Of a stretch of 32,235 bases of DNA, positions 9,061-31,737 are shown piece by piece (the first letter of the stretch is position 1; each line of letters begins with the position of its first letter). Source of the stretch: Octopus bimaculoides (lineage: Eukaryota); NCBI RefSeq assembly GCF_001194135.2, contig NC_068997.1, forward strand, positions 41,213,798-41,246,032, in the 5' to 3' direction. Under the pieces are notes generated by a model that did no database searches, had not been told where the DNA came from, and was given only the letters and a program-made list of their open reading frames with translations. The position numbers and the translations under genes were made by a program.

Positions 9061-9275
9061 AATGTATTCTTTTCTACTCTAGGCACAAGGCCCGAAATGT
9101 TTGGGGAGGTGGGGCCAGTCGATTAGATTGACCCCAGTACACAACTGGTACTTAATTTATCGACTCTGAAAGGATGAAAGGCAAAGTCAACCTCAGTGGA
9201 ATTTGAATTCAGAACGTAAAGACAGATGAAATACCGCTAAGCATTTCACCCGGCGTGCTAACGTTTCTGCCAGCT
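9061..9275 (-). mobile_element. SINE family A copy with 10-bp TSD
   Basis: Family A body, flanked by TAAGATATTA at 9051-9060 and 9276-9285. Confidence 0.85.
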
Positions 9276-9358: not shown

Positions 9359-10389
9359 TGACTAATGATTAATGGAGAGGCAAGATCTTTTGTCCTGTAC
9401 ATAACTGATGCATATTTTATTAACTTGGTGTTGTGAAAGTAGATCCTGAAGCAAGTAAGAAAAACATATAGTTTAGTTCTATAATACTTCTACCTCTCTA
9501 CAGTTTTTACTTTAATTAATAATCTATTATAATTAAGCAAACAGATGATAGCCCTGAAGCAGAAAGTTTACTTTTCTTAAAGATTTCCATGTTTACCTTC
9601 TCACAGTAAATTTTGAGAATTTGATTGTTTTATAGTTGGCCTACTTCTAGTTTGCACTGTTTCAAACTCCCAGTTCATTTATCAGACAAACTTTTGAACA
9701 TCAAATCTCTTATCAGTGAGGAAGGTTCTGAGCTAAACAATCATTGCAGAAGTTCCCCAAAGCCCAGCAGTTAATCTGTAAAATCTGAAGTAATGTTATG
9801 AAGCTAATAGCTATCTTAGACTAAGCTACAAGAATAGTTATGAAATATTAGCTGAACTGAGAAATAGAGGAAATGAGTTATTAGAAAACAAACAATACAC
9901 TACAAAATATCTTTCAAATTTTGTTTATTTCCACATCAATATAAAGCTTTGTGTTGAATTTCTCTCAAGTAGAGATCTTTACCAGAGTCTCTTTCTAGCA
10001 GGTCATATATTCACTCTGGCTAACATGAACTGAATCACCTACTCGTTTGCCAACCTCATCAACACAATAGCATGCACTTCCGTTACATTGGATTTTGTTG
10101 TAATTACCGTTGGATTCACAAAGGAACAGTTTGCCAATCATGCCAGATTTTTCATATGCAAACTTATGGCGGGCACAGTCTGAAAGAAACCATAAAGAAA
10201 GTTTTAGAGAAAGTTAATGAATCAATATTTATCTATCATCTCAATTTTTTGTGGTAAATACAAAAGTTATGTTAATGTTAACATATTTAAAGAAGTGAAC
10301 TTTAAGAAAATACAGTAATCCTTCGTCATATCATGGTTCAATTATTGTGCACTCAGTACTTTGCAGATTTTTCTGGACTGGCTCTTGTG

Positions 10390-10500
10390 CGAGTGGCACA
10401 TAAAATACACCATTTTGAGCGTGGCCGTTGCCAGTACCGCCTGACTGGCCTTCGTGCGGGTGACACGTAAAAGCACCCACTACACTCTCTGAGTGGTTGC
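10390..10500 (+). mobile_element. Probable family D upstream segment
   Basis: Ends ACTCTCTGAGTGGTT, matching ACTCTCGGAGTGGTT at the start of the 5213 copy. Confidence 0.55.
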
Positions 10501-12089
10501 TCTCCTTAGACAAGATACTCAACTCCACTTACAGCCACTAGATAAACGAGGTACACCATCATGTTAAAACAGCCAAGGCTTGAGCCAACAAGAGAGTTTC
10601 TATGCTGTCACTCCAACTGCTAGAAATAACAACTAAATCTTTCTTAAATCACATCCTGCCATCTTAAAAACACACAGTAATCCTCAGGATACAAAGAGAC
10701 AGGATGGTCATTGAGAGAGTGTCTTTGTTAAAGAATAACAGCAAATGAGTTTCTATTGCAAGATTTTATATGCTTAAGGAACTAAAATAACTTTATGTTA
10801 GTCATTATGGAAAATATTAGGATTTCAAAAATGTGACACAGCCAGAATATTTCAGATGACTTTATCAAGGGATACAAAGTATCTTTCAGAATCTCTTCCC
10901 TCTGTTAATCCTAGTCTTCAAAATATAAAAATATTTTCTGAAATACCAAAAAAGCTGAGCTGTCAGATCCAAGTACAATATACTTTTGTGCAACTATCTC
11001 ATAATTATTTCTCTATATAATTACGTGTAACTGTTATATTTTTAATGAATAAAGGCAGCTGCCATGTTTTTAACACTGGAATCATCTCTTTAAAACGATT
11101 GCCTTGTAGGCAATGCTAGATGAATTCATTTAACTTGTAGAGAATTATAACTTACTGCAATTCGTTCTTTGGCTTTCATGAATAGCTGATTCGAATTTGG
11201 GGATATGAGTACCATCTGTGTGTGCACAGTAACACCTATGAAATAAAAATGACATTAATAAAAGACATTTTTCAGCTGCCTTAAAATCAGTTGTTTTTTT
11301 TTATATATATAATCACATCACACTAAATATAAAACGAAATATGAATCATATAAGTTTCTTNNNNNNNNNNNNNNNNNNNNNNNNNNNNNNNNNNNNNNNN
11401 NNNNNNNNNNNNNNNNNNNNNNNNNNNNNNNNNNNNNNNNNNNNNNNNNNNNNNNNNNNNACAGAAGAACCGCTGTGTCTCGACAGTTTGCAAAGTTATT
11501 GACCAGTCATGTCAAAAACGAGGGCCTTTAGTCAAATATCATTCAAATCACACAGTGCTCCCTTCTCAATGAACAGACACATGGGTCAATGTAGTTTTAG
11601 ACACACTATGTTTAAATTACATAAAAAGCCTCATTAATCATAGGTGTCATAGACTAAGACTAACTTGTGTTTTAAGCAACAACAACAACAACCAGTTTAT
11701 TTACTGGATAATTTAGCTTCATGCTAATTAGTTCCATCATTTTCAGATTATATTTTAATTACCAGCAACCCAATCTTTACAAATTCAGTATTCTTCAAAT
11801 CAGTTCCACCATTAAATTTTGTTTATTTCTGTTTGTTTCTCATGGTTTAATCAGAGGAGAAAGAAGAGCTTTAACTGATTACCTCATCGCATGGTCACCA
11901 TGACTAGTGCGGCATTGGAGGAGGGGTAAGGGAAGACTAAGGTGTAAGTCATTGACTGCCTGAAACTGGGGACCTGGAGCAAATGATTGTATCAGAGTGG
12001 ACTCAACTAAAAGTATATAAGGATCAGGTAGTGTTCCAAGAATAAGTACAGTTCACCTGACTGGGTTTTCTATAAAACATTTAAATCAT

Positions 12090-12570
12090 AATGATACAAT
12101 ATTGTGAAAACACTAAACCACAATAATTGGATCATACTGTACCATAAGATATTTGTATCACAATATCACAGTATTGGGATTATAGCAATGCTATGATATT
12201 GGGATCACAACATACCACAATATAGTAATTACAATGATACCTTTACATTAGGACCCCATCATTTCATAATAAGGGATTGCAAGGACACCACAATATTGGG
12301 ATCACGTCATCCCACAAAGGTGAGATGACTTTAATTGTATAATATTGAGATTTCAATTATAGGACAGGATATTAGGATTACAACAATGACAGTCAACCGT
12401 GGGATCACAAGTATGTAATAATAATGAGATCACAACTATCCACACAACTGAAGTCTTAATGATAGCATGGGATTTGGGATCATGACTACACCATGATATT
12501 GGGACCATAACTACAGCACTGGTATCCCAATGATATAGCAGGATATTGGGATTGTAATGATTCCATAATA
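12090..12570. repeat. Degenerate minisatellite of about 24-25 bp (core ACAATATTGGGATCAC)
   Basis: The core recurs with GGG at 12176, 12201, 12273, 12298, 12401, 12476, 12501 and 12548, with eroded units in between. Confidence 0.75.
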
Positions 12571-13599
12571 TACATAGTACAAAGAGGAGGCCTTCGATCA
12601 AAGTTAAGAAACACTTATAACAACATGAGTTAACACATTAAGTATCAATAATGTCTCAGGTACATCAACTCCTTTCAATCAGTTTTCCTAACTGGGAGTT
12701 CTCTCCCTTGCTTTCATATGTTTTTATTTAGGTATTGTTCAACAATGCTTACCTCATCTTAATATAGTTATATAGTACATATTTATTAAAATTATTATGC
12801 TCACCATATTAATTAAGTTAGCTTTAACTTCACTATTTAATACTAGGTGTGTTAGCTAACCCGTAAGTGTATATTCTTCATAAGGAAGGCATCCATGAGA
12901 AATTTTCGCTATTACAGACATCGTTATTCAGTAGTTCTGAATGCTGTATAATGGTTAACTCTTTCTTTCTCCAAGGGATCTCCTCATGAAAGAATTTCAT
13001 CTCAGCATTGAAAGAAACACAATTACAAAATAATTTCTGTTGCTTACAGCAGGGAACTGTACCTCCATATGATATATCTACTAGACTATTGTGGGTTAAG
13101 AATTTATCTGTAGACTTTAGCCAACACTACATATAGACAGATGTAAATATCTTATACTTGTATATTGTATNNNNNNNNNNNNNNNNNNNNNNNNNNNNNN
13201 NNNNNNNNNNNNNNNNNNNNNNNNNNNNNNNNNNNNNNNNNNNNNNNNNNNNNNNNNNNNNNNNNNNNNNNNNNNNNNNNNNNNNNNNNNNNNNNNNNNN
13301 NNNNNNNNNNNNNNNNNNNNNNNNNNNNNNNNNNNNNNNNNNNNNNNNNNNNNNNNNNNNNNNNNNNNNNNNNNNNNNNNNNNNNNNNNNNNNNNNNNNN
13401 NNNNNNNNNNNNNNNNNNNNNNNNNNNNNNNNNNNNNNNNNNNNNNNNNNNNGGCTATTTTCAGTACTGTTGTATAAAGTATAGGATGTTTGATAGTGCC
13501 AATAACTGATCTTGTGTATGAATATAATGCTTCTCTGAGTATCTCAAATGGAATTCAGTTCCATACATAGCATCAGCAAAGCGAATATTAATTTTTGCC

Positions 13600-13730
13600 A
13601 TTGGTACAAAGCCATATATATTTGTATGGGAAGGTTAGAAGCGATCAAGTGGCTTTCATTATTTGCCTGGTAATTATTTTATTGACTCTGAACAGTTGTA
13701 AAGCAAGGTTCACATTAAATGGTTATGGAC
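13600..13730 (-). mobile_element. Degraded SINE family A fragment
   Basis: CTGGTAATTATTTTTATTGACTCTGAA...GCAAGGTTCAC aligns loosely to the family A body. Confidence 0.5.
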
Positions 13731-13835
13731 TCTGGAATTAAAGAGACTAAGTCTTCAGTTCATCACCTTGCAGTTTTCTTTACCAATACACTGCATTAAA
13801 TATTAAACTTCCACAGTTTCAAATTGAAAGAAACA

Positions 13836-13945
13836 TCACTTACTGGTGCAAGTCCTGGTATGTTCGTTGCAGACAAGATTATGACCACATTTAGTGATGG
13901 CTGGCATTTCAAGCAATCCTTCAAGAATGCAGAGATCGCCTTCCT
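13836..13945 (-). CDS. Coding exon 2 of the same peptide
   Basis: Acceptor (tta)n-tttcAG at 13947-13946. The phase-1 join gives K-EGDLCILEGLLEMPAITKCGHNLVCNEHTRTCTSK*. This adds 4 Cys for an even total of 12; the spliced product is 91 aa. Confidence 0.88.
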
Positions 13946-13948
13946 CTG

Positions 13949-13949
13949 A

Positions 13950-13997
<48 letters not shown>
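13949..13997. repeat. (AAT)n microsatellite
   Basis: Read directly from the sequence. Confidence 0.95.
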
Positions 13998-13999
13998 CA

Positions 14000-14700
14000 T
14001 GGATTCATGCTTGCTGCCCAAGAAACAAGCCAATAAACATCCTCACAAATGGAAAAGACCCAAATGTAGAATCTCTGACAAATTATTCAAGACAACGGAC
14101 TGTATTGTTTCAGAGTGCTACACCCCTATTCCAAATGAATATAAAACTAAGCTTGACTGAGTTGGCAAATGTATTCACTGGACAGTGAAAACATTTTCTC
14201 CCTTTATTACCTTAGCGGTGCATCTTTTTGCCACCTCTTCTGAGACAAATGTGAACGCCACTGAAGCGTATCCTTTGAAAAACGTATAAATACTGGTATG
14301 AGTACCATCCATTATCAGTAAGTGAAGCAAAAGATGCAACAATTTTGTGGAATTTTATGATCTGTGAAGACCGTACCATAACCATCAATTGGCCTGATAT
14401 CAGCATTAAAGATTTTTAAAATAAAACATTAAAAAATGTATCTCCTAAAGAATATGGGAAATTTGTGGTGTGCAAAAACCTTGAAATTGAGATTAGCAGA
14501 ATATGGCATTTGAAAACATAAAGCACCCCTGTTGTAAGTGGTATGCCTGGAGTCCTAAAGAAAGATTGTTAATGGGTTTCTTGAAAACGTCCCTGATGAG
14601 CCCAACATTTATGAAATTCAAAAATGTCATTCACATCATGGCTTGTATTTTTTTGCAAATTTCTATCTTTGTAACACCAAATGATTAATACTGAATTACC
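14000..14700 (+). mobile_element. 5'-truncated R4/Dong-like (restriction-like endonuclease) retrotransposon in the peptide gene intron
   Basis: Decayed C-terminus: GFMLAAQ, DPKCR..., WYEYHP...ILWNF...RTITINWPDI..., LEIEISRIWHLKT. Starts directly after (AAT)n. Confidence 0.8.
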
Positions 14701-14780
14701 TTCTTTTATATATTATTTCTATACTTTATAATTTTGATTTATGTTTCTGTATACTGAGTCTTAATTAATTTTATACCATG

Positions 14781-15007
14781 TTAACACTTTAGTGTTCAGA
14801 TGACTGTCAAATGTAATATTTATTTATTCACATTGTTTTTAATTAATTATTTATTAATTTGTAGCTTTTAGGTTTCAATAACAACATTGTCTATTTTTAG
14901 AATGACATTGTAGGGTTTGTATGAGATGTTGGATCTGGTTGATTTGAACATAAAAAAATGTAGAATATTTGGGCCAAACCTGACTGGTTTAAATACTAAA
15001 GAGTTAA
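14781..15007. mobile_element. piggyBac-type MITE in the peptide gene intron
   Basis: Termini TTAA-CACTTTAG ... CTAAAGAG-TTAA. Colinear with the 4013-4574 copy once its SINE is removed. Confidence 0.75.
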
Positions 15008-15331
15008 AGCTACATTATGCTGTGAAATGCCACTTTGACATAACAGTACCTGCCTTAGGAAACTGGTTGATAACCAGCATGGATTGTTAATCACTATTAA
15101 CATCATCATTTAACATCCAATTCCCCTGCTGGAATGGATTGGATGGTACAACAGGAGTTAATGTGTTCGGGGACTATGCCAAGCTCCAATGTTTCCTTAA
15201 GCATAGATGTCTTTCCAAATGCCAACCATTTTATTAAGTTTACTGGTGCTTTTTACTGAATGTTATTGTAAGCTCTACCATACTTTCATCTTTCAATTCC
15301 AACAAATTATCTTGGATAAGAACCAACTTAC

Positions 15332-15497
15332 TCAAATATTTTATGCAAATATCACAACATCCACAATATCCTTTTCCTATTTCACCATCTGCACAGTTTT
15401 CTACAGTTCCACAGGTTACAATACTGCAGACGTTTGGTGGGCAGACGTAAGCACTGGCTGCTACAACACTCAAGGCAATGAAGAAGATGTACTTCAT
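15332..15497 (-). CDS. Coding exon 1 of a secreted 12-Cys peptide (IGFBP-N / FPI-1 / neuroparsin-like)
   Basis: ATG at 15497 in the context gtcaaccATG. Translates as MKYIFFIALSVVAASA (signal-peptide-like) then YVCPPNVCSIVTCGTVENCADGEIGKGYCGCCDICIKYL. Ends at a phase-1 donor A|GTAAGT (15331-15326). An upstream acceptor catttcAG lies at 15516-15515. Confidence 0.9.
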
Positions 15498-15780: not shown

Positions 15781-15959
15781 AGGGGGGGGGGCAATCGATT
15801 AGATCGACCCCAGCACACAACTGGTACTTAATTTATCGACCCCGAAAGGATGAAAGGCAAAAGTCGACCTCGGCGGAATTTGAACTGAGAACGTGAAGAC
15901 AGACGAAATACCGCTAAGCATTTTGCCCGGCGTGCTAACGTTTCTGCCAGCTCGCCATC
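15781..15959 (-). mobile_element. SINE family A copy
   Basis: High similarity to the 9061-9275 copy. Confidence 0.85.
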
Positions 15960-16239
15960 TTATCTTTATCGCTTTAGTATCTTTATATGGTGAGTAAAAA
16001 CATAATGAAGAGAACATGTGACAACGTATGCAAAGTAAATATGCTTTAAGCTACGAACGTCAGCTTTTCTATGTCACCCACCAACCGCAGCATGAAGGAT
16101 ATTAGATCTGGAAAACAAAGGAGAAGGGATGGTTATCACTGACACGCCCTTGATCCAAACAGTAACAGCAACCAGTTTAAGAATTCCCATAAATAAATAT
16201 GTAAATAGCAGTATAATTCTCCTCAAAATTACAGCTTAC

Positions 16240-16929: not shown

Positions 16930-17337
16930 ATGTGGCTGTGTGGTAAGTAGCTTGCTTACCAACCACATGGTTCTGAGTTCAGTCCCACTGCGTGGCACCT
17001 TGGGCAAGTGTCTTCTACTGTAGCCTCGGGCCGACTAAAGCCTTGTGAGTGGATTTGGCAGACGGAAACTGAAAGAAGTCCGTCGTATATATATATATAT
17101 ATATATATATATNNNNNNNNNNNNNNNNNNNNNNNTGTTTGTGTGTCTGTGTTTGTCCTCCCAGCATCGCTTGACAACCGATGCTGGTGTGTTTACGTCC
17201 CCGTAACCTGGCGGTTCGGCAAAAACGACCGATAGAATAAGTACTAGGCTTCCAAAGAATAAGTCCTGGGGTCGATTTGCTCGACTAAAGGCGGTGCTCC
17301 AGCATGGCCACAGTCAAATGACTGAAACAAGTAAAAG
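16930..17337 (+). mobile_element. tRNA-derived SINE family C with internal (TA)n
   Basis: Head TGGCTGTGTGGTAAG...GAGTTCAGTCCC, central microsatellite, conserved 3' half ending GAAACAAGTAAAAGAG. Confidence 0.85.
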
Positions 17338-17838
17338 AGTAAGAGTAAAAGAGAGAACCAGGAAATAGAAGGGAGAAAAGGGAAGAGGGGAAGGAAGAAA
17401 GGAGAAAGAAAGGAAGAAGATAAGGAAGTTCACTGTTTAAGACTATTTAAGCACTAGATTTATACACAAGCTCTTACAAGTCATACCGTAAGCCCAACGA
17501 GAAATTGACCTAAGCTAACGCCACATTCTGCTATCTGACTGGCTTCAGCATTCAAGAGTTTCACTGGTTTAAGGAGTGAGGAGAAAGAACTCAGTCAACG
17601 CTGTTGGATAATTTAGAAAACTTCAAACTGGTTTATTAAGCATTAAGAGACAAATATAAGAAATAAACAGAACGACTCCAGCTCGAGTCGAATGGTTTAG
17701 AAAGTAAATCTTATAAAGTGGAACAAATTCAACAGCTTCACATGTTAGTGTTACAAACTATTTTATATATGCAAAGACACGTAGCGTATTATACATATAT
17801 CGACGTTTGTATACGTATTTATATTTGTATATATAAAA

Positions 17839-20300: not shown

Positions 20301-20467
20301 TCTCATCTTGTAACGAACCTGTCAGATATTTACAATTCTGGCAAATGTCTAGAGAAATAATACTTTTTAAGTAGGACTGCTAGATCGATATTATTAAACC
20401 CGAAGGAACAGGCTAAACTGTATCTTATGAGTTAGTTGAGCGATGAATTGGGAAATGGAGGAACAGA

Positions 20468-20545
20468 AGAGAGAGAGAGAGAGAGAGAGAGAGAAAGTAT
20501 GTCTGTGTGTGTGTGTGTGTGTGTGCGTGCGTACGTGCGTGTGCG
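20468..20545. repeat. (GA)n-(GT)n compound microsatellite
   Basis: Read directly from the sequence. Confidence 0.9.
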
Positions 20546-20744
20546 TGACTGTTTGTACGTGCGCGCTTTCTGTTTGAGATTTCATTCACATTTCGGACTA
20601 AGCCCTGAGTTTCTCACTATCGTTATTCAAAACACTGGCTGCTTCATAACTGAGACGAAGAACAACTTAGGGAAATGTAATGCGTGGGTACAATGTTCAT
20701 GCTTTCCGTAACAGCATTAGTATAACTCATTGAAAATATTTCAA

Positions 20745-22443: not shown

Positions 22444-22887
22444 TGTTTAGATCTAAACTTGATAGGTGGCATTGCTTACTTTCCTATAACGTTGCAACAA
22501 ATTTTGATGTAAACTTTTTCTACTGGACCAAATCTCAATTGTCTTATGCCAAAATGTAGTTAGGAACCAGTCCTCTTCAAAAATGTTAACAATCTTCAAT
22601 TAGCGACAAGCTTTTTGAAAGATGCAGCGTGTAAGTAAATTACAGCCTTAAGAATATTATTCAACTACAACCGTAGTTGAATGATATATCGTGGTTATTA
22701 TGTTAAACTGTCGTATGTCCAAATTTGGTCAAATGCGTTTTCTTTCAATATCTATTTTTGCTTGCAATAACTGGTTCTTTTGGTCAAACTATCGTATCTC
22801 CAGCTGCTTCAGATGCCAAAATACCAAAAATTGTCAAAGTGTAGTACAACGGTTTTGAACTTACGGCACTTTTGCATAATAGCAACA

Positions 22888-22889
<2 letters not shown>

Positions 22890-22940
<51 letters not shown>

Positions 22941-22947
22941 CCACACA
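22890..22947. repeat. (CA)n microsatellite
   Basis: Read directly from the sequence. Confidence 0.95.
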
Positions 22948-23439
22948 ATGTGTACATATGTGCTCATCGTTGAACTTGCTCGCATTAAACTGGATGACGG
23001 ATAAATTGGGCGAAATCCGAATAAAGAGGGTAATTGTTAGTATCGACTTTGACTATTAGTGTTGTGTATTCTGAGTGTGTAAGGGGAGTGCTGCAAGTCC
23101 TCTAAATATAGCAAACTTTCCATAACCATTAACCTCATTTAACAATGTAATCATGGAAAACTATGTTTTCTATTTCCTCTCATGAAATATTTTGCAGATT
23201 TTCCTGAAATTGCAACATGCACACACCTACAGTTGTTTGTACCACGATATGTACAGGCCGAAAAGAAGGATAATGAAAAGATGAAAGCATTTATAGGATG
23301 GAAAGCATTTATACACATCCGGTTATTGTTATCTTTTACGACCACTCTTTGTAGCACTCTGCACCCACTAGATTGCCTCTCAATTCATTGTCTACTATTC
23401 GAATTTATTCACCATTACCCTGCTCCATTCTTTCTATCT

Positions 23440-25800: not shown

Positions 25801-26494
25801 TATATCAATGTATAATAATAAAACTTCCTCTTTGCAGATATTCATACAAAATTTAAATCTATAAATAGATTGTGAATCATGTTCGGTGTACATAAATTTA
25901 ATTGACAAGGAAGTAGAATGCGTGACAGGCAACAAACCACCTTAACAAGTCGAAATGTTTTCTGTTGTTAAACCCCTTCTCAGCTTTGATCGAGCAACCC
26001 TATGATCAAAGACAATCCATCCGTAAACACCACATTTTTCTCTTATGTGTTGCGAACCTAGATCCACATTATCTAACGTGTCTTTTTCGAAGATTGTGCG
26101 AAGTGGTTTGAATGGATTTGGTTGATGTTTCTCGCTTGTCAAACGACCACGTACAGCTTTACTCTTTCTCTCAAGCAACTTGGATAAATCCATGTGACGT
26201 AAAACAAGTCATTTGGATAAATTTGAGTGGGGAATTGCACTAAATTCATGCTTGGCTCAATCTACGTAACAAAATTTCTCGGTAATATTCTTTAAACTGA
26301 ATCAATAAATAAAATTTATTAAACTATAAATAGTATTTATAAACAATTTTTCCTCTCTTAATCCTTTCTGCTGACAATTGCGTCGATTTTATTCACATGA
26401 ATACCGACTGAAGAGGAATGTCTCGCCTAATTTTAGCAATTTTGAATTGTCCTCGATTTTTATAAGAACTCTAATAGTACATGAGTATTTTTAC

Positions 26495-26560
26495 ATACAC
26501 ACACACATACATACATACATACATACATACATACATACATGCATACATACATACATACAT
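26495..26560. repeat. (CATA)n microsatellite
   Basis: Read directly from the sequence. Confidence 0.95.
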
Positions 26561-27134
26561 ATGAAAGAAAAAGGCTGATTAGAAGACTGCAGATTCAAGC
26601 CATCAATGGAACTATAAAGATATGTAAAACTTTCCAAAAATTTAGCACATAAATACATATGCATGCATCTAGACATNNNNNNNNNNNNNNNNNNNNNNNN
26701 NNNNNNNNNNNNNNNNNNNNNNNNNNNNNNNNNNNNNNNNNNNNNNNNNNNNNNNNNNNNNNNNNNNNNNNNNNNNNNNNNNNNNNNNNNNNNNNNNNNN
26801 NNNNNNNNNNNNNNNNNNNNNNNNNNNNNNNNNNNNNNNNNNNNNNNNNNNNNNNNNNNNNNNNNNNNNNNNNNNNNNNNNNNNNNNNNNNNNNNNNNNN
26901 NNNNNNNNNNNNNNNNNNNNNNNNNNNNNNNNNNNNNNNNNNNNNNNNNNNNNNNNNNNNNNNNNNNNNNNNNNNNNNNNNNNNNNNCACACACACACAG
27001 ACACACGCACACACATAAACATTCATAGTGAAGAAATCGATGAGTTTCGGAGGCCTTTATGGGCACAGCATCACCAATAAAAAAACAGTAGCAGCAACGA
27101 CGACAACAACAACAACAAAGCAACAACAATAATC

Positions 27135-27390: not shown

Positions 27391-27679
27391 ATACCCGAAA
27401 ACCGCTGTAAAATGCGAGGAAGTATCAAGCTGAAAGATATTGCCTTGAACAACGAAGAAGAGATTCTGTAGTGAGGATTGAGGAAGTGCTCGTCTAAATA
27501 TAAACATCAAACGGATGTTATCGTTTGCTCAACTACTGGGATAGACTGCGTAATTTTGATTACCTCTATTTCTTTTCTTTTTTTTTCCAATCAGTCGGTT
27601 TCTCTTTTCTTTTTTTAATTTGGATTTGTCTGAATCATTCAAGTGCTGCAACTTTTTCTCATACCTTTTCTCTTTTATC

Positions 27680-27972
27680 TTTTAACTCTTGCGTTTTACT
27701 TGTTCCATTCATGGGACAGCGGTCATGCTGGAGTGGAGTACCGCCTTCAAGGGTTTAGTCGAACAAACCAGTCCAGTATTTATTTAGAAAAAAAAAATGT
27801 CAAGTACTTTCTCTATTGGTTTCAATTGTCGAACCGCAAAGTTAGAAAGACGTTAAAATAAAAAAAACATCACCTGTTGGCAAGCAGTGCGAGGACAAAG
27901 ACGAAAACAAAGTCACACGCACACGCACGCAAACATACATATACACACACACACACACATACATACATACAT
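27680..27972 (-). mobile_element. SINE family C 3' half with (CA)/(CATA) tract
   Basis: Reverse complement of the 17140-17330 segment (CATGCTGGAG...CCGCC...GTCGA...GAACCGC). Confidence 0.65.
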
Positions 27973-27978
27973 AGGTGC

Positions 27979-28010
27979 AGGCGTGGCTGTGTGGTAAGAA
28001 ACTCGCTTCC
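27979..28010 (+). mobile_element. SINE family C head, interrupted by a LINE insertion
   Basis: GGCGTGGCTGTGTGGTAAGAAACTCGCTTCC matches the 16930 head up to CTT(C/A)C, then similarity stops abruptly. Confidence 0.75.
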
Positions 28011-29820
28011 GGTCTTGCGCGTTGTGCTGGTTTCTTCCTGTACAGTGGAGTGGGCGTGAGTCGTTCGGCTGCTCCCAATGTTGAACTAAAAAGAACAATT
28101 TGAAAAAATTCGCCGCCGGTGTAAGTTGTTTTTGTTGTCTAGCTGGGCGGTAATTAGTTGCTCGTAATTTTTTTCCAGCAGGTTAGTGTCCAGCTTTGTA
28201 GCACTTGCGCTTGCCTCTGGCGGATCTTTTGTGTGTTCGTAGTTACGAACAAATTGTGTGTTTACTGTTTGTGATGGGTGTGTTCGCTGCCCCACAGCGG
28301 TGAAGATTTTTGTTGGCATTTTAGCCGAAAACCTTTGTGTGTTCGTCTTTTTTGTTTGGCGTTCTGCCGAAATTTTGGAGTTCCTGTTTGGAGTACCTGT
28401 TTGGAATACCTGTCGAAGATTTTGTGACATTAACTTTTTTCTTTTCTTTGGACTATCTACTTCTGCTCTGTCTCTTATTTTTGTTTTTATTTTTCCTTCT
28501 AACTTTTAATTTTGTGAACTAGTGTTTTTTTCTGTGAACTATTTTTGAAATATCTTTTTGGTCATGGAACCTAAAAAGAAAATCACTCTCTTGGGGTGGG
28601 AATTATGCCCACCCAAGCAATGGTTAAAACAAATGGAAGAAAGAGCGGTGGTGTTGCGGACGTATTTTAAGTCATTAGATACCATTACGGTCTTTCCTCA
28701 AGTGGATATCGAGAGAGAGTTGGTGGAACATCTGCCCACCATTAAGTTTATGGCCAGGGGTGTCAAGTACGCAACGGTTTGGTTGCTATTTGAAGGACAG
28801 GACATTTTGTTTCTCCCTACCTATTGCGGGAAGAAATTGACTCGTGCTTGGATCTGTGGACTGCCACCAGGTATAGAGCCTGAGTGGATAAAAGATACTA
28901 TACACCGGGGTCTTGGTGGCAGTGGATCCAAGCTACTAAATGTAAAAATATTGCCTTCAGCTGATTGGGTTGGGTCAAAAGCTGTTTTGACCATATGGAC
29001 CCAATCAGCTAAAGATCTGGTTCTTTCAGATTTTCTAAGGATGGCCGGGCGCATGTATCCGGTGATCCTTTGAGGGACGCCCCCCACCACCCAAGTGTCA
29101 GGGCCGTGGTAAGGTCCTGGAGCAGAATAAGGAAAACGTGCCCGCCGCCCCTCTATTGGAGGGGGAGACGGCGAAAGTTGTGGAGGCGGCTGCCTCCATA
29201 AAAAGAAAGAGAAAGGTGCAAATAATGCACAGGAGGCAGAGGAGGATAGNNNNNNNNNNNNNNNNNNNNNNNNNNNNNNNNNNNNNNNNNNNNNNNNNNN
29301 NNNNNNNNNNNNNNNNNNNNNNNNNNNNNNNNNNNNNNNNNNNNNGAATGAGGCTCCGTCGGTGGGAAGTGTGCCACTGACGGAGCTGCTTGAGGCTCCT
29401 TCCCGTGATGAGGAGGAGTTTGTCCTCCTTTATCGTAAGAAAATTGTTGGATGACCTGTGCGACCGAGAAATTATGTTCGCAGAGTGCACAATCAGTCCA
29501 TTGTGGCCTCCGCAGGTGACTGCGGAGTTACTACAGCATTCAGTGTTGTCAAGGGCCATGGAGACCCTTGACAAAGAAGAGCTCGCATTCCTTTTTGCGG
29601 GCCCAAATGATTGGGGGTTTTTTTTCATGTATTTTTAATGGTTTTTATTGAACTGCTTGAACATTAATTTCGAGGGGTTTTCTGTCGGCGAGCGCCGAAT
29701 ACCCCTCTCATTTATATCATCCATACCTTATCATTCTTCATGTCATTAATGTTTTTGTCCAGCCCGCTGTCCTTCTGGCAATTCTGTGTACAGCCTATAT
29801 GGCTAATTCGATGAAATAAA
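28011..29820 (+). mobile_element. L1/Tx1-like non-LTR element, apparently ORF1-only
   Basis: GC-richer 5' UTR, an ORF1-like frame, and a 3' UTR ending in AATAAA (29815-29820). Flanked by GAA(A/G)CTCGCTTCC direct repeats. Confidence 0.65.
28564..29073 (+). pseudogene. LINE ORF1-like frame, frameshifted at about 29070; continues to about 29638
   Basis: MEPKKK...ICGLPPGIEPEWI...MYPVIL*, then in the +1 frame EGRPPPPKCQGRG. This resembles the EGRPPxCxxC pre-knuckle motif of L1/Tx1 ORF1, with a degenerate zinc knuckle. Confidence 0.55.
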
Positions 29821-29833
29821 GAAGCTCGCTTCC

Positions 29834-29975
29834 GGTATTGGCTAGTTGGCTTCTCACTAGTGAACCAAGGAAGACATGAGTCGTGTGGGCTCTGTCTTAC
29901 GAAAGAAAAACGGAAAACTGCCGAGGTAGGTGACTTTGTTCGTTTGAGCTGGGCATAATTTATTGTTTGTCGTTT
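29834..29975 (+). mobile_element. 5' end of a second related L1/Tx1-like element
   Basis: Starts GGT right after the duplicated target. AGCTGGGCATAATTTATTGTT resembles AGCTGGGCGGTAATTAGTTGC in the first element's 5' UTR. Confidence 0.45.
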
Positions 29976-29986
29976 TTTTTTTTTTC

Positions 29987-30826
29987 AGTAAATGAAAACA
30001 AGAAAGCATCACACTCAGTAACAAAACAGGCAAAGGAATATCTAAGTGAATTCCAAATACAACAAATTCTAGGATTAGGCATACTAGAAACAAGCACAGA
30101 AAAAGCTAAGCGTATGAAAACACGTGCTAAAACTGTTGCCTTAGATATTCTTACAGATAAATGGCAAGAAAAACCTCTCAATGGCAAATACCCAAAGAGA
30201 GCTAATAATGCCGATGTTGACAAATCCCTTACCCATCAATGGCTAATGGCTTCTGGCTTAAAATCAGAAACAGAAGGGTTTATCATAGCAGCCCAAGATC
30301 AATGCTTACCTATAAGAAACTACCAGGCCAACATATTAAAGAATGGCAGCTTCCCAACATGTCGTGTATGTCAACAACAAAATGAAACCATAGATCATGT
30401 TGTCTCCATGTGCAGTCTTCTTGCGCTTACAAAGTATCTCAACAGGTATGATAGAGCAGCACAGTATATTTACTCGGTAATTTGAAAAAACCTGGATCTG
30501 CTCCATGATGAAAACTGGTAGGAACACAGACCACCTCCAGTGCTTGAAAATGATCACATCTCACTCCTCTGGAACTTCACCATTCAAGCTGACAGAAAGA
30601 TAGATGCAAATAGACCAGACATTATATTGAAAGACTTCAGACAAAAATAGAAATTAGCAAAATGTGGAACCTGAAGACTAAAACAATACCTGTTGTCATA
30701 GGTGCCCTAGGAATGATAGCAAAAGGGGGTGATTGCTACCTAGCTCAGATGAGGTCTCTGAGTGAGACTTGGAGCCAACTTGTACAAATGCATAGCAAAA
30801 GTCAAACATGAAATAGTAATATTAAT
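29987..30826 (+). mobile_element. R4/Dong-like retrotransposon 3' fragment 1
   Basis: KWQEKPLNGKY...SETEGFIIAAQDQ, CCHC knuckle CRVC...HVVSMC, LWNFTIQ...RPDII. Internal deletions near 30648 and 30750; degenerate tail AAATAGTAATATTAAT at 30811-30826. Confidence 0.85.
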
Positions 30827-31737
30827 TGGAAAATGGAACCACTGCATGGGCAATACCCCAGAGAAATCGAGGGAAAAGACGAAATCAACACTAGGAGATG
30901 GCTAAGAAAAAGTGATCTGAAAGGATGCACTGAGACATTGATATGTAGCGCGTTGGAACAAGCTGTAAGGACTAATTACACCAAGTTACAAATAGATAAG
31001 AGTAACGAATCGCCCCTTTGTAGGATGTGTAACAGTAGAAACGAAACAATCTCATATGTTGTGAGCGAGTATAGCAGGCTGGCCGAAGAGCACTACAACA
31101 GGAGGTACGATAACGTGACTAAGTTAGTCCACTATGTAGAAAGTACGTCCTGAACAGAGTACGGAAATGGTACGAACATGAATCAGAAGGAGTCACCGAG
31201 AACAAAGAAAATAAGATGCTGTGGGATTTTACAATCCAGTGTGACTCCCTAATCAAGGCTCGGAGACCAGGTATTGTTGTGGTATACAAAGGAAAAAAGG
31301 AAATCAAGATCATAGATATTGCGATACCTGGGGTTGCACGCATTAGTGACAAAAAACTAGAGAAGATTGAAAAATGCAGACCACTAAAAGACGAAATTGC
31401 AAGAATGTGAACTGTGAGGAGTGTATCTGTCATTCTAGTAGCTGCAAGGGCATTAGGGGCACTAACAACGAATTTCGAGAAATATATAAGAGAAATCGGA
31501 ATTGACATGAGGGTAGAACATGCTCAAAAAACTGCTCTACTGGGAACAGCAAAGATTTTGAGATTGGTACTTAGCTGTTCAATGTCTCCTACAATAATTA
31601 ACAATCAAGTATCAAAGCTTATAACGTGCAGAAAGAGACCCCGTGAGACTTCTGACGGCAGGCTGCTGTCCCCTCTCACAGAATCTACTAGAACAAATAA
31701 GACCGAACGTTCTGAGATGTAAAACAACAACAACAAC

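What the first reader, a model, noticed from the sequence alone, without database searches (positions are those of the whole stretch)
13836..15497. Spliced gene for a secreted 12-Cys IGFBP-N / fungal-protease-inhibitor-like peptide, hidden by the ORF track
Seen: two ORF fragments join through canonical GT-AG phase-1 splicing into MKYIFFIALSVVAASA-YVCPPNVCSIVTCGTVENCADGEIGKGYCGCCDICIKYLKEGDLCILEGLLEMPAITKCGHNLVCNEHTRTCTSK (91 aa, 12 Cys, CGCC). Known: a 12-Cys domain with CxCC is the signature of IGFBP N-domains, arthropod neuroparsins, single insulin-binding-domain proteins and insect fungal protease inhibitor-1 (FPI-1). Inferred: the spacing (CGCCxxC, then LxEGxxC, then C-x5-C-x6-C) is FPI-1-like, with no Kazal, Ig or thyroglobulin extension. 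This could be a stand-alone cephalopod secreted inhibitor, immune or gland peptide, or insulin-binding protein.
Basis: partly seen in the sequence, partly recalled or inferred. Interest (0 to 1): 0.7.

Follow-up and report, generated by a model that had tools for sequence, protein, structure and literature searches.

The report
Octopus inhibitor-like gene split by gap
The 91-residue "stand-alone" cysteine-rich peptide is real sequence, but it is only the front end of a larger octopus gene; an assembly gap hides the next exon, and the full secreted protein also carries two thyroglobulin-type domains and most likely inhibits proteases.

Summary
On the minus strand, 15497..15332 and 13945..13836 join through GT-AG in phase 1 to give exactly the 91-aa, 12-Cys peptide. 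It is not hidden: the same 91 aa is UniProt A0A0L8GHE0 (Octopus bimaculoides, "IGFBP N-terminal domain-containing protein").

The domain call is supported at family level. A 46-member profile hits AmFPI-1 (PDB 3BT4, E=6e-7). Members match Pfam amfpi-1 (33/46) and IGFBP (36/46).

The "no thyroglobulin extension" claim is wrong. The TGA sits inside a consensus donor (ACC A|GTAAGTGA). Downstream on the same strand are exon 4 (11235..11156) and exon 5 (10179..9995). Both are in phase and encode thyroglobulin type-1 sequence (PF00086, E=2e-8).

The window is collinear with the Octopus vulgaris gene for a 5-exon N-domain+TY+TY protein. That gene uses the identical donor. Its exon 3 maps into the window's 100-N gap (11361..11460). 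The O. bimaculoides annotation therefore holds two fragments (91 aa and 94 aa) of one roughly 216-aa gene.

Relatives occur in cephalopods, gastropods, spiders and moths. None has been studied.

The likely function is a secreted compound protease inhibitor. Binding of insulin-like peptides is the main rival. The N-domain evolves fast (dN/dS about 1.1, all Cys kept).

The parts
15450..15497 (-). Start codon and signal peptide, MKYIFFIALSVVAASA; cleavage is predicted after ASA.
   Evidence: Sequence. Nearly identical in the O. vulgaris orthologue, with dN/dS 0.13. All family members align here with a hydrophobic leader. The cleavage site is inferred from the -3/-1 rule; no predictor was available.
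15332..15497 (-). Coding exon 1 (166 nt): signal peptide plus Cys 1-8 of the N-domain, including CGCCDIC. It ends TTGA|GTAAGT (phase 1).
   Evidence: The same boundary is present in O. vulgaris L001.
13946..15331 (-). Intron 1 (1386 nt, GT..AG). It contains an (AAT)16 microsatellite at 13950..13997 just before the acceptor.
   Evidence: It is 87-94% identical to intron 1 of O. vulgaris.
13844..13945 (-). Coding exon 2 (102 nt): Cys 9-12 of the N-domain. It ends ACC A| (phase 1).
   Evidence: The O. vulgaris exon 2 has the same length (102 nt) and the same boundaries.
13836..13843 (-). GTAAGTGA: a consensus 5' splice site whose bases 6-8 are the TGA that ends the 91-aa model.
   Evidence: The O. 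vulgaris orthologue has the identical context ATCA|GTAAGTGATGTTTCTTTCAATTTGAAA, and its annotated gene splices there to exon 3.
13678..13683 (-). AATAAA 153 nt after the TGA. This is the only feature that could support a short isoform.
   Evidence: It is not conserved in O. vulgaris, which reads AATACA. About 0.3 such hexamers are expected per 300 nt at this base composition (my estimate).
11361..11460 (.). 100-N assembly gap that replaces roughly 0.7-1.3 kb, including coding exon 3 (118 nt in O. vulgaris: linker plus the first half of TY1).
   Evidence: Window 11655..11461 aligns to L001 27321..27549 and window 11311..10504 aligns to L001 28816..29616. Exon 3 of L001 is 27641..27758. The picture is the same against paralogue locus L002. 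No exon with the required phases exists in the sequenced DNA 13835..11241. The gap is unchanged in the chromosome-level assembly.
11156..11235 (-). Coding exon 4 (80 nt): second half of TY1, (V)CYCAHTDGTHIPKFESAIHESQRTNC. The acceptor is tttatttcatag|G (phase 2) and the donor is TGCA|GTAAGT (phase 1).
   Evidence: O. vulgaris has the same 80-nt exon.
9995..10179 (-). Coding exon 5 (185 nt including TAG at 9997..9995): a complete thyroglobulin type-1 domain (TY2, 6 Cys, QC and CYCVD motifs). The acceptor is ggtttctttcag|AC (phase 1).
   Evidence: Pfam PF00086 at E=1.9e-8, 34.1 bits against a cut-off of 20.6. tblastn with homologues reaches E=3e-17. PDB matches: thyroglobulin 5e-20, saxiphilin 2e-7, p41 0.013.
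9924..9929 (-). AATAAA polyadenylation signal about 65 nt after the exon-5 stop.
   Evidence: Conserved in O. vulgaris.

Best explanation
The finding is the first two coding exons of a five-exon Octopus bimaculoides gene (minus strand, about 15497..9924). The gene encodes a secreted protein of roughly 216 aa: a signal peptide, a 12-Cys AmFPI-1/IGFBP-N-like domain, and two thyroglobulin type-1 (TY) domains with almost no linker.

Exon 3 is lost in a 100-N assembly gap. Gene predictors therefore ended the upstream model at a TGA that lies inside the exon-2 splice donor, giving the 91-aa A0A0L8GHE0. They started a second model at an intronic ATG, giving the 94-aa XP_052830004.1.

Shown here: the exon structure, the phases, the synteny and the domain identities.

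Inferred: the protein acts outside the cell as a multi-headed, tight-binding protease inhibitor. The two TY domains would block papain-like cysteine cathepsins, and perhaps aspartic ones, in the way thyropins do (p41 fragment, equistatin, saxiphilin, tick IrThy). The N-domain would bind serine or metallo-proteases or microbial surfaces, as its nearest studied relatives AmFPI-1 and GmCP8 do. The setting is probably immune, digestive or salivary.

My confidence is about 0.9 for the gene structure and about 0.45 for the inhibitor function.
For: Gene structure:
- The donor overlaps the stop codon, and O. vulgaris has the identical donor.
- Exons 4 and 5 are in phase. They give ...QRTNC-N-CARHKF, matching the family motif NCNCARDQ.
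- With a 118-nt exon 3, the CDS is 651 nt and in frame.
- The window is collinear with the O. vulgaris locus over about 28 kb, at 84-97% identity. The O. vulgaris model is N-domain+TY+TY, and exon 3 maps into the gap.
- The O. sinensis RefSeq models that share 90% clusters with the O. vulgaris proteins have the same lengths (221 and 243/247 aa).
- Thirteen RNA-seq-run contigs of about 1.05-1.2 kb from a decapodiform-type relative carry an uninterrupted 218-aa N-domain+TY+TY ORF.
- The 94-aa model starts MSFLFHR, read from intron 3. It lacks a signal peptide and begins in the middle of a domain.
- The polyA signal after exon 5 is conserved; the one after exon 2 is not.

Function:
- The N-domain profile hits AmFPI-1 at 6.4e-7 but IGFBP7 only at E=3.
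- The best Pfam amfpi-1 hit is 2.4e-7, against 2.5e-5 for IGFBP.
- Foldseek ranks AmFPI-1 first for the N-domain.
- For the full-length O. vulgaris paralogue P0052, Foldseek ranks the tandem TY domains of saxiphilin first (1e-7). The p41-cathepsin L inhibitor gives TM 0.66 and rmsd 1.8.
- Relatives carry 1-4 TY repeats, as multi-headed inhibitors do.
- The N-domain has dN/dS of about 1.1 with 12/12 Cys kept. The signal peptide has 0.13 and the TY part 0.40. This pattern is typical of proteins facing foreign targets.
- Literature on AmFPI-1, GmCP8 and thyropins: PMC3278429, PMC9273619, PMC10889554.
Against: Exon 3 of O. bimaculoides itself was not seen; it is inferred from synteny. No O. bimaculoides transcript was available.

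No biochemical data exist for any member of this family. Manduca CP8, an AmFPI-1 relative, inhibited none of seven proteases tested (PMC9273619). Many TY domains are not inhibitors.

The IB-like plus TY combination is also the design of the vertebrate IGF-binding proteins, and the full-length model weakly matches IGFBP3 (E=3.5e-3).

The dN/dS estimate rests on 73 codons and one species pair. A value near 1 also fits relaxed constraint.
Confidence: 0.6

Rival explanations
1. Same five-exon gene, but the protein is a carrier or antagonist of insulin-like peptides. It would be a protostome counterpart of the IGFBPs, with the N-domain and a TY domain clamping the hormone as in IGFBP1-6.
For: The IB-like N-domain followed by TY is the IGFBP1-6 design (PMC7866140). 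PF00219 gives weak hits in 36 of 46 members. The full-length model matches IGFBP3 in 7WRQ (E=3.5e-3), and its TY domains match the IGFBP1 and IGFBP4 C-domains. Stand-alone IB proteins of molluscs and arthropods (perlustrin, SIBDs) are reported to bind insulin or IGFs (PMC3374290, PMC7866140).
Against: The N-domain is closer to AmFPI-1 than to any IGFBP. TY2 is closer to thyroglobulin, saxiphilin and p41 than to IGFBP C-domains (IGFBP6 E=0.61). There are two TY domains, up to four in relatives, and no L-domain linker. An N-domain dN/dS of about 1.1 is unlike a conserved hormone binder.
Confidence: 0.25
2. The 91-aa stand-alone peptide is a real, major product. It would be made by reading into intron 2 and polyadenylating at the AATAAA at 13683.
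For: Stand-alone N-domain proteins of 90-120 aa exist in the family, for example the 97-aa scorpion P0010. An AATAAA lies 153 nt after the TGA.
Against: The stop lies inside a consensus donor that the orthologous O. vulgaris gene model uses. The AATAAA is not conserved. Exons 4 and 5 have no start codon or signal peptide of their own and need these upstream exons. The model is explained by the gap.
Confidence: 0.08
3. The O. bimaculoides copy is a decaying pseudogene of a tandemly duplicated family.
For: N-domain dN/dS is about 1.1 and identity to the syntenic orthologue is only 58%, although flanking DNA is 85-94% identical. Exon 3 is unseen. A paralogue exists.
Against: All four visible exons are open, with intact GT/AG sites. 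All 12+9 visible Cys are kept. The signal peptide (dN/dS 0.13) and the TY part (0.40) are under constraint.
Confidence: 0.07

Closest known systems
AmFPI-1 / GmCP8 / Manduca CP8 (Pfam PF12190 amfpi-1; PDB 3BT4), lepidopteran haemolymph 12-Cys proteins
   Same: A secreted domain of about 75-85 aa with 12 Cys, including C-x-C-C-x2-C. It is the best sequence-profile match (E=6.4e-7) and the best fold match. The reported activities are protease inhibition, opsonin and antimicrobial action (PMC9273619, PMC3278429).
   Different: Those proteins are single-domain. The octopus protein carries two TY domains after it. The window's own domain does not reach the Pfam threshold. Identity to 3BT4 is about 23%.
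Vertebrate IGFBP1-6
   Same: The order of modules is the same: signal peptide, 12-Cys IB-type domain with CGCC, then a C-terminal 6-Cys thyroglobulin type-1 domain.
   Different: There is no L-domain linker (4-10 residues instead of about 50-100) and there are two TY domains. The PROSITE PS00222 pattern and the Pfam PF00219 threshold are not met. The N-domain is split by an intron. Neither domain is specifically closest to its IGFBP counterpart.
Thyropins with tandem TY domains: tick IrThy, equistatin, the saxiphilin TY pair, p41 fragment (MEROPS I31)
   Same: Two consecutive type-1A TY domains (6 Cys each, QC...CYCVD) in a small secreted invertebrate protein. The saxiphilin TY pair is the top structural match, and p41 gives TM 0.66 (PMC10889554).
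   Different: Those inhibitors lack an N-terminal AmFPI-1/IB-like domain. Inhibition has not been tested for the octopus family.
Stand-alone IB-domain proteins: spider SIBD-1 (3ZXB), crustacean SIBDs, abalone perlustrin, abalone 'IGFBP-5'
   Same: This is what the 91-aa model would be. The fold match to SIBD-1 is TM 0.50. The family does contain stand-alone members, such as the 97-aa scorpion protein.
   Different: The octopus gene continues into TY exons.
Predicted proteins of sister species: O. vulgaris CAI9734987.1/CAI9734988.1, O. sinensis XP_029646721/2 ('thyroglobulin isoform X1/X2') and XP_029646879 ('nidogen-2-like'), Argonauta hians 'nidogen-2-like'
   Same: These are orthologues and paralogues of the window gene. 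CAI9734987.1 (P0054) shares five-exon structure and synteny with it. For O. sinensis, only membership of the same 90% clusters and matching lengths were seen; for Argonauta, only the protein sequence.
   Different: They are complete models. The names are misleading transfers based on the TY domain, and none has been studied.

Membership tests
amfpi-1 (PF12190) / AmFPI-1-like 12-Cys domain | About 80-aa secreted domain with 12 conserved Cys (six disulfides) | tested here: met
   There are 12 Cys with spacing 4,4,5,9,1,0,2,9,13,5,6. Eleven are invariant and the twelfth is at least 90% conserved across 46 relatives. They align Cys-for-Cys with 3BT4.
amfpi-1 (PF12190) / AmFPI-1-like 12-Cys domain | Significant match to the Pfam model or to AmFPI-1 itself | tested here: inconclusive
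   The window domain alone gives no Pfam hit at E<=10. The family profile against 3BT4 gives E=6.4e-7. 33 of 46 members hit PF12190, best 2.4e-7. P0007 scores 25.7 bits against a cut-off of 25. Membership therefore holds through the family, not through the single sequence.
amfpi-1 (PF12190) / AmFPI-1-like 12-Cys domain | Fold like 3BT4 | tested here: inconclusive
   AF2 gives pLDDT 82. 3BT4 is the top Foldseek hit, but at E=0.029 and TM 0.43-0.49.
amfpi-1 (PF12190) / AmFPI-1-like 12-Cys domain | Inhibits fungal or serine proteases | not testable with these tools
   This needs recombinant protein.
IGFBP1-6 | N-terminal IB domain passing PF00219 or the PROSITE PS00222 pattern (GCGCCxxCA-x6-C) | tested here: not met
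   There is no PF00219 hit for the window protein. The family's best is 2.5e-5, and the one member whose score was printed (P0010) reaches 17.4 bits against a cut-off of 28. The PS00222 regex does not match: Y for G/P, I for A/L/P, and x8 instead of x6. UniProt's name shows that another automatic rule fires; I could not check which one.
IGFBP1-6 | Variable linker (L) domain between the N- and C-domains | tested here: not met
   Only 4-10 residues lie between the last N-domain Cys and the first TY Cys in the O. vulgaris orthologue and paralogue.
IGFBP1-6 | A single C-terminal thyroglobulin type-1 domain with 6 Cys | tested here: not met
   There are two TY domains, and 1-4 in relatives. TY2 itself does have 6 Cys.
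IGFBP1-6 | High-affinity binding of IGF or insulin-like peptides | not testable with these tools
   This needs binding assays.
Thyroglobulin type-1 domain (PF00086) / thyropins (MEROPS I31) | TY domain above the Pfam threshold, with 6 Cys and the QC and CWCV-type motifs | tested here: met
   Exon 5 scores 34.1 bits against a cut-off of 20.6, with QC...CYCVD. PDB matches are thyroglobulin, saxiphilin and p41. Only the second half of TY1 is visible (exon 4); the first half is inferred from the orthologue.
Thyroglobulin type-1 domain (PF00086) / thyropins (MEROPS I31) | Inhibition of papain-like cysteine (or aspartic) proteases | not testable with these tools
   Only a structural resemblance to p41 (TM 0.66, rmsd 1.8) and to saxiphilin was obtained.
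Stand-alone single-IB-domain proteins (SIBD / perlustrin type) | The IB-type domain is the whole mature protein | tested here: not met
   The stop lies in a used splice donor. In-phase TY exons lie downstream. The O. vulgaris orthologue has three modules.

The most novel reading that the evidence does not exclude
The mollusc and arthropod family 'AmFPI-1/IB-like domain + thyroglobulin type-1 domains' may be the protostome sister of the canonical IGFBPs. In that case the IB+TY design, usually treated as a chordate invention, would date back to the bilaterian ancestor. AmFPI-1-type immune inhibitors, SIBDs and IGFBPs would then be trimmed or specialised descendants of one ancestral two-module binder, and the octopus protein might still bind insulin-like peptides.
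Probability: 0.12. Interest if true: 0.7.

Novelty: new variant of a known kind. Interest (0 to 1): 0.35.

Why it matters
There are three practical points.

1. Two O. bimaculoides database entries (A0A0L8GHE0, 91 aa; XP_052830004.1/A0A0L8I0K9, 94 aa) are fragments of one gene. A paralogue entry (A0A0L8GH43, 70 aa) is also truncated. Anyone mining this genome for "single IB-domain" or venom or immune peptides would be misled.

2. The work defines an unstudied and widespread protostome family: cephalopods, gastropods, spiders and Lepidoptera, plus stand-alone forms in scorpions. It joins an AmFPI-1/IGFBP-N-like domain to thyropin-type domains. Public annotation names its members "nidogen-2-like", "thyroglobulin" or "uncharacterized".

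3. The IB-like+TY order mirrors vertebrate IGFBPs. This gives a concrete protein with which to test whether that design predates chordates or arose twice.

The fast-evolving N-domain on a fixed disulphide frame also makes it a candidate for host-pathogen or predator-prey biology in octopus.

Tried and rejected
- Pfam and PDB searches with the 91-aa peptide alone gave nothing significant. A family profile was needed.
- The word-indexed protein search with the peptide returned only itself.
- An exact-product contig look-up for the 91-aa protein found nothing on record.
- tblastn found no second copy of the N-domain in the window.
- I searched 13835..11241 for the missing exon 3 in three ways: homologue tblastn, a TY motif regex, and enumeration of all AG..GT exons with phase 1 in and phase 2 out. 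None was TY-like. I first suspected the 282-N gap (13171..13452). Collinearity with O. vulgaris instead places exon 3 in the 100-N gap.
- A direct exon 2 to exon 5 join is in phase and gives a neat IB+single-TY protein. I rejected it as the main form once exon 4 and the orthologue structure were found.
- I hoped the chromosome-level assembly had closed the gap. It is identical, Ns included.
- In some searches I mislabelled hits from L002 as a second copy in L001. This was corrected.
- I tried to identify the species or tissue of RNA runs SRR82816xx through the literature, without a relevant hit.
- I tried to link the family to the O. vulgaris posterior-salivary-gland proteome entry TRINITY_DN12299 (PMC7693380). 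No sequences or peptides are in the held supplements, so the link is unverified.
- Literature searches for a described IB+TY protein in molluscs or cephalopods found none.
- Cys-rich ORFs elsewhere in the window are translations of CA/TG microsatellites.
Full report
**1. Observation**

On the minus strand an ATG at 15497 opens an exon that ends TTGA|GTAAGT at 15332. An acceptor, ttatttcag|AGGAAGG, opens a second exon at 13945. The peptide has 12 Cys with spacing 4,4,5,9,1,0,2,9,13,5,6 and the motif CGCCDIC.

The window is eukaryotic scaffold DNA: 36% G+C, five runs of N, microsatellites and decayed retroelements. It is 100% identical to Octopus bimaculoides GCA_001194135.2, chromosome CM046617.1 at about 41.21 Mb, gaps included.

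The very same 91-aa protein is UniProt A0A0L8GHE0, "IGFBP N-terminal domain-containing protein".

**2. What the N-domain is**

Alone, the peptide hits no Pfam family and nothing significant in the PDB. A full HMMER scan of 1.84 billion representatives with the mature part found 49 relatives at E<=1e-3, the best at 7e-12.

An alignment of 46 such domains keeps 11 Cys invariant and the twelfth in at least 90% of sequences. Results with it:
- Its profile hits PDB 3BT4, fungal protease inhibitor-1 of Antheraea mylitta (AmFPI-1), at E=6.4e-7. IGFBP7 scores only E=3.
- Scanned one by one, 33 of 46 members match Pfam PF12190 amfpi-1 (best 2.4e-7) and 36 of 46 match PF00219 IGFBP (best 2.5e-5).
- An AF2 model (pLDDT 82) finds AmFPI-1 first, then spider SIBD-1, then the IGFBP4 and HtrA1 N-domains. 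TM scores are near 0.5 and no hit reaches E<=0.001.

The PROSITE IGFBP pattern is not met.

**3.

The TGA is bases 6-8 of GTAAGTGA, a consensus donor in phase 1. A scan for Cys-rich open segments turned up a thyroglobulin type-1 (TY) exon on the same strand at 10179..9995. It has a strong phase-1 acceptor, a TAG stop and an AATAAA about 65 nt further on. Pfam PF00086 scores it at E=1.9e-8, 34 bits against a cut-off of 20.6.

The nine long relatives that I scanned carry one to three TY stretches after the N-domain by Pfam's count. Reading the sequences directly shows up to four repeats. tblastn with these relatives also revealed an 80-nt exon at 11235..11156. It enters in phase 2 and leaves in phase 1, and encodes the second half of a first TY domain. 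Joined to exon 5 it reads ...QRTNC-N-CARHKF, which is the family's NCNCARDQ junction.

The first half of TY1 (phase 1 in, phase 2 out) is not in the sequenced DNA between exons 2 and 4.

**4. Orthologues settle it**

A profile search returned these complete N-domain+TY+TY proteins:
- Octopus vulgaris P0052 (221 aa) and P0054 (247 aa).
- Argonauta hians P0053.
- Acanthosepion pharaonis P0005.
- Proteins from a spider and from moths.

Cluster look-ups added O. sinensis RefSeq models named "thyroglobulin isoform X1/X2" and "nidogen-2-like". They also identified the gastropods Gigantopelta, Babylonia and Pomacea, and a 97-aa stand-alone form in scorpions.

The window is collinear with the O. vulgaris P0054 locus (L001) from window 27973 to 1, at 84-97% identity, so the two genes are orthologous by synteny. 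The P0054 gene has five coding exons of 166, 102, 118, 80 and 184 nt plus stop. The window's exons 1, 2, 4 and 5 have the same lengths and boundaries. O. vulgaris has the identical ATCA|GTAAGTGATGTTTCTTTCAATTTGAAA, and its model splices there.

The window sequences flanking the 100-N gap (11361..11460) align to L001 27321..27549 and 28816..29616. L001 exon 3 is 27641..27758. The same holds for the paralogue locus L002. With a 118-nt exon 3 the window CDS is 651 nt, or 216 aa, and in frame.

Thirteen RNA-seq-run contigs of about 1.05-1.2 kb carry an uninterrupted 218-aa N-domain+TY+TY ORF of a related cephalopod. That gives transcript-level evidence that the modules sit on one mRNA.

In O. bimaculoides, exons 4-5 are annotated separately as a 94-aa protein (XP_052830004.1 / A0A0L8I0K9). 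It begins MSFLFHR, which is read from intron 3. It has no signal peptide and starts in the middle of a domain.

The AATAAA after exon 2 is not conserved in O. vulgaris, whereas the one after exon 5 is.

Conclusion: one five-exon gene has been split into two fragment models by an assembly gap that persists in the chromosome-level assembly.

**5. How it probably works**

Shown: the product is a secreted protein of about 216 aa. It has an AmFPI-1/IB-like 12-Cys domain followed, after only 4-10 residues, by two type-1A TY domains.

Inferred: it is a multi-headed extracellular protease inhibitor. The reasons are as follows.
- The nearest studied relatives of the N-domain, AmFPI-1 and GmCP8, are haemolymph proteins reported to inhibit fungal and serine or metallo-proteases and to act as opsonins. 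Manduca CP8 did not inhibit (PMC3278429, PMC9273619).
- Small secreted tandem-TY proteins of invertebrates are cysteine-cathepsin inhibitors (tick IrThy, equistatin; PMC10889554).
- By sequence, TY2 is closer to thyroglobulin, saxiphilin and p41 than to IGFBP C-domains.
- The full-length AF2 model of the O. vulgaris paralogue P0052 (pLDDT 77) finds the saxiphilin TY pair first (1e-7). It superposes on the p41-cathepsin L inhibitor at TM 0.66.
- Relatives vary the number of TY repeats from one to four.
- Between O. bimaculoides and O. vulgaris, the N-domain has dN=0.27, dS=0.24 and dN/dS of about 1.1, at 58% identity with all 12 Cys kept. The signal peptide has dN/dS 0.13 and the TY part 0.40. 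Variable loops on a fixed frame fit a protein that meets foreign or fast-changing targets. The sample is small, though, and relaxed constraint cannot be excluded.

A TY protein with a signal peptide was detected in the O. vulgaris posterior salivary gland proteome. Its best hit was a Pomacea "saxiphilin-like" protein, at 42.5% identity over 228 aligned residues and 93% coverage (PMC7693380). It may belong to this family, but I could not verify that.

The main rival is an IGFBP-like carrier of insulin-like peptides. The module order is that of IGFBP1-6, and the model weakly matches IGFBP3 (E=3.5e-3). Against it stand the missing L-domain, the two TY domains, the closer kinship of both modules to inhibitor families, and the fast evolution of the N-domain.

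**6. Comparison with the known, and novelty**

The protein fails the defining tests for IGFBP1-6: Pfam or PROSITE, the linker, and a single TY. It also fails the test for stand-alone SIBD/perlustrin-type proteins. It meets the tests for the TY domain and, through its family, for the amfpi-1 domain.

Orthologues are predicted in sister species under misleading names. I found no paper that describes an AmFPI-1/IB-like + TY protein. A recent survey treats IGFBP homologues outside chordates as scattered and different (PMC11925022).

I rate it a new variant of a known kind: ordinary as a gene, moderately interesting as a family. The main practical result is a correction of the gene model.

Noticed in passing
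window 11361-11460, 13171-13452, 17113-17135, 26677-26987, 29250-29345: There are five runs of N. The three that fall inside locus L014 (the 23-, 282- and 100-N runs) are identical in the chromosome-level O. bimaculoides assembly GCA_001194135.2. That assembly evidently re-scaffolded the old contigs without closing gaps. At least one gap removes a coding exon.
   Followed up: yes
L002 (O. vulgaris OX597830.1:15893907-15921187) versus L001 (15780211-15822858): O. vulgaris has a paralogue (P0052, 221 aa) about 70-100 kb from the orthologue, in the opposite orientation. Its O. bimaculoides counterpart appears in UniProt only as a 70-aa fragment (A0A0L8GH43), also named 'IGFBP N-terminal domain-containing'. 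It is probably another truncated model.
   Followed up: partly
L001 22753-22863 / P0054 residues 1-31: The O. vulgaris and O. sinensis 247-aa models carry a 31-residue N-terminal extension (MFMFCTSFFNNKK...) ahead of the conserved MKYIFLIALSVVAASA signal peptide. This would bury the signal peptide and is probably an over-extended start.
   Followed up: no
window 15795-15962 and 9117-9275: A dispersed repeat of about 120-160 bp flanks the gene on both sides. It has many copies in the O. vulgaris loci at 80-91% identity, including a tandem run spaced 184 bp apart in L002 13661-14289. It looks like a SINE or satellite-type element.
   Followed up: no
window 16932-17357: A repeat of about 400 bp occurs in both orientations at several places in L001 and L002 (80-94% identity). 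It is presumably a transposable element.
   Followed up: no
window 28558-31722: A cluster of 100-170-aa ORFs on both strands gives only a weak, sub-threshold zf-RVT hit (29967-30485, 20.9 bits against a cut-off of 27.5). These look like decayed non-LTR retrotransposon remnants.
   Followed up: partly
window 22787-23052, 26463-26594, 27845-28182, 20436-20574: 'Cys-rich' ORFs here are translations of (CA)n/(TG)n-type microsatellites (CVCVCV...), not genes.
   Followed up: yes
P0004 (Pomacea canaliculata PVD37348.1), residues ~170-270: The Pomacea family member carries a long (NTDxV)n-like tandem insertion between its two TY domains. This is either a real low-complexity linker or an annotation read-through of a repeat.
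   Followed up: no
window 13950-13997: A perfect (AAT)16 microsatellite forms the tract immediately upstream of the exon-2 acceptor. The O. vulgaris orthologue has a different, shorter AT-rich tract there.
   Followed up: partly
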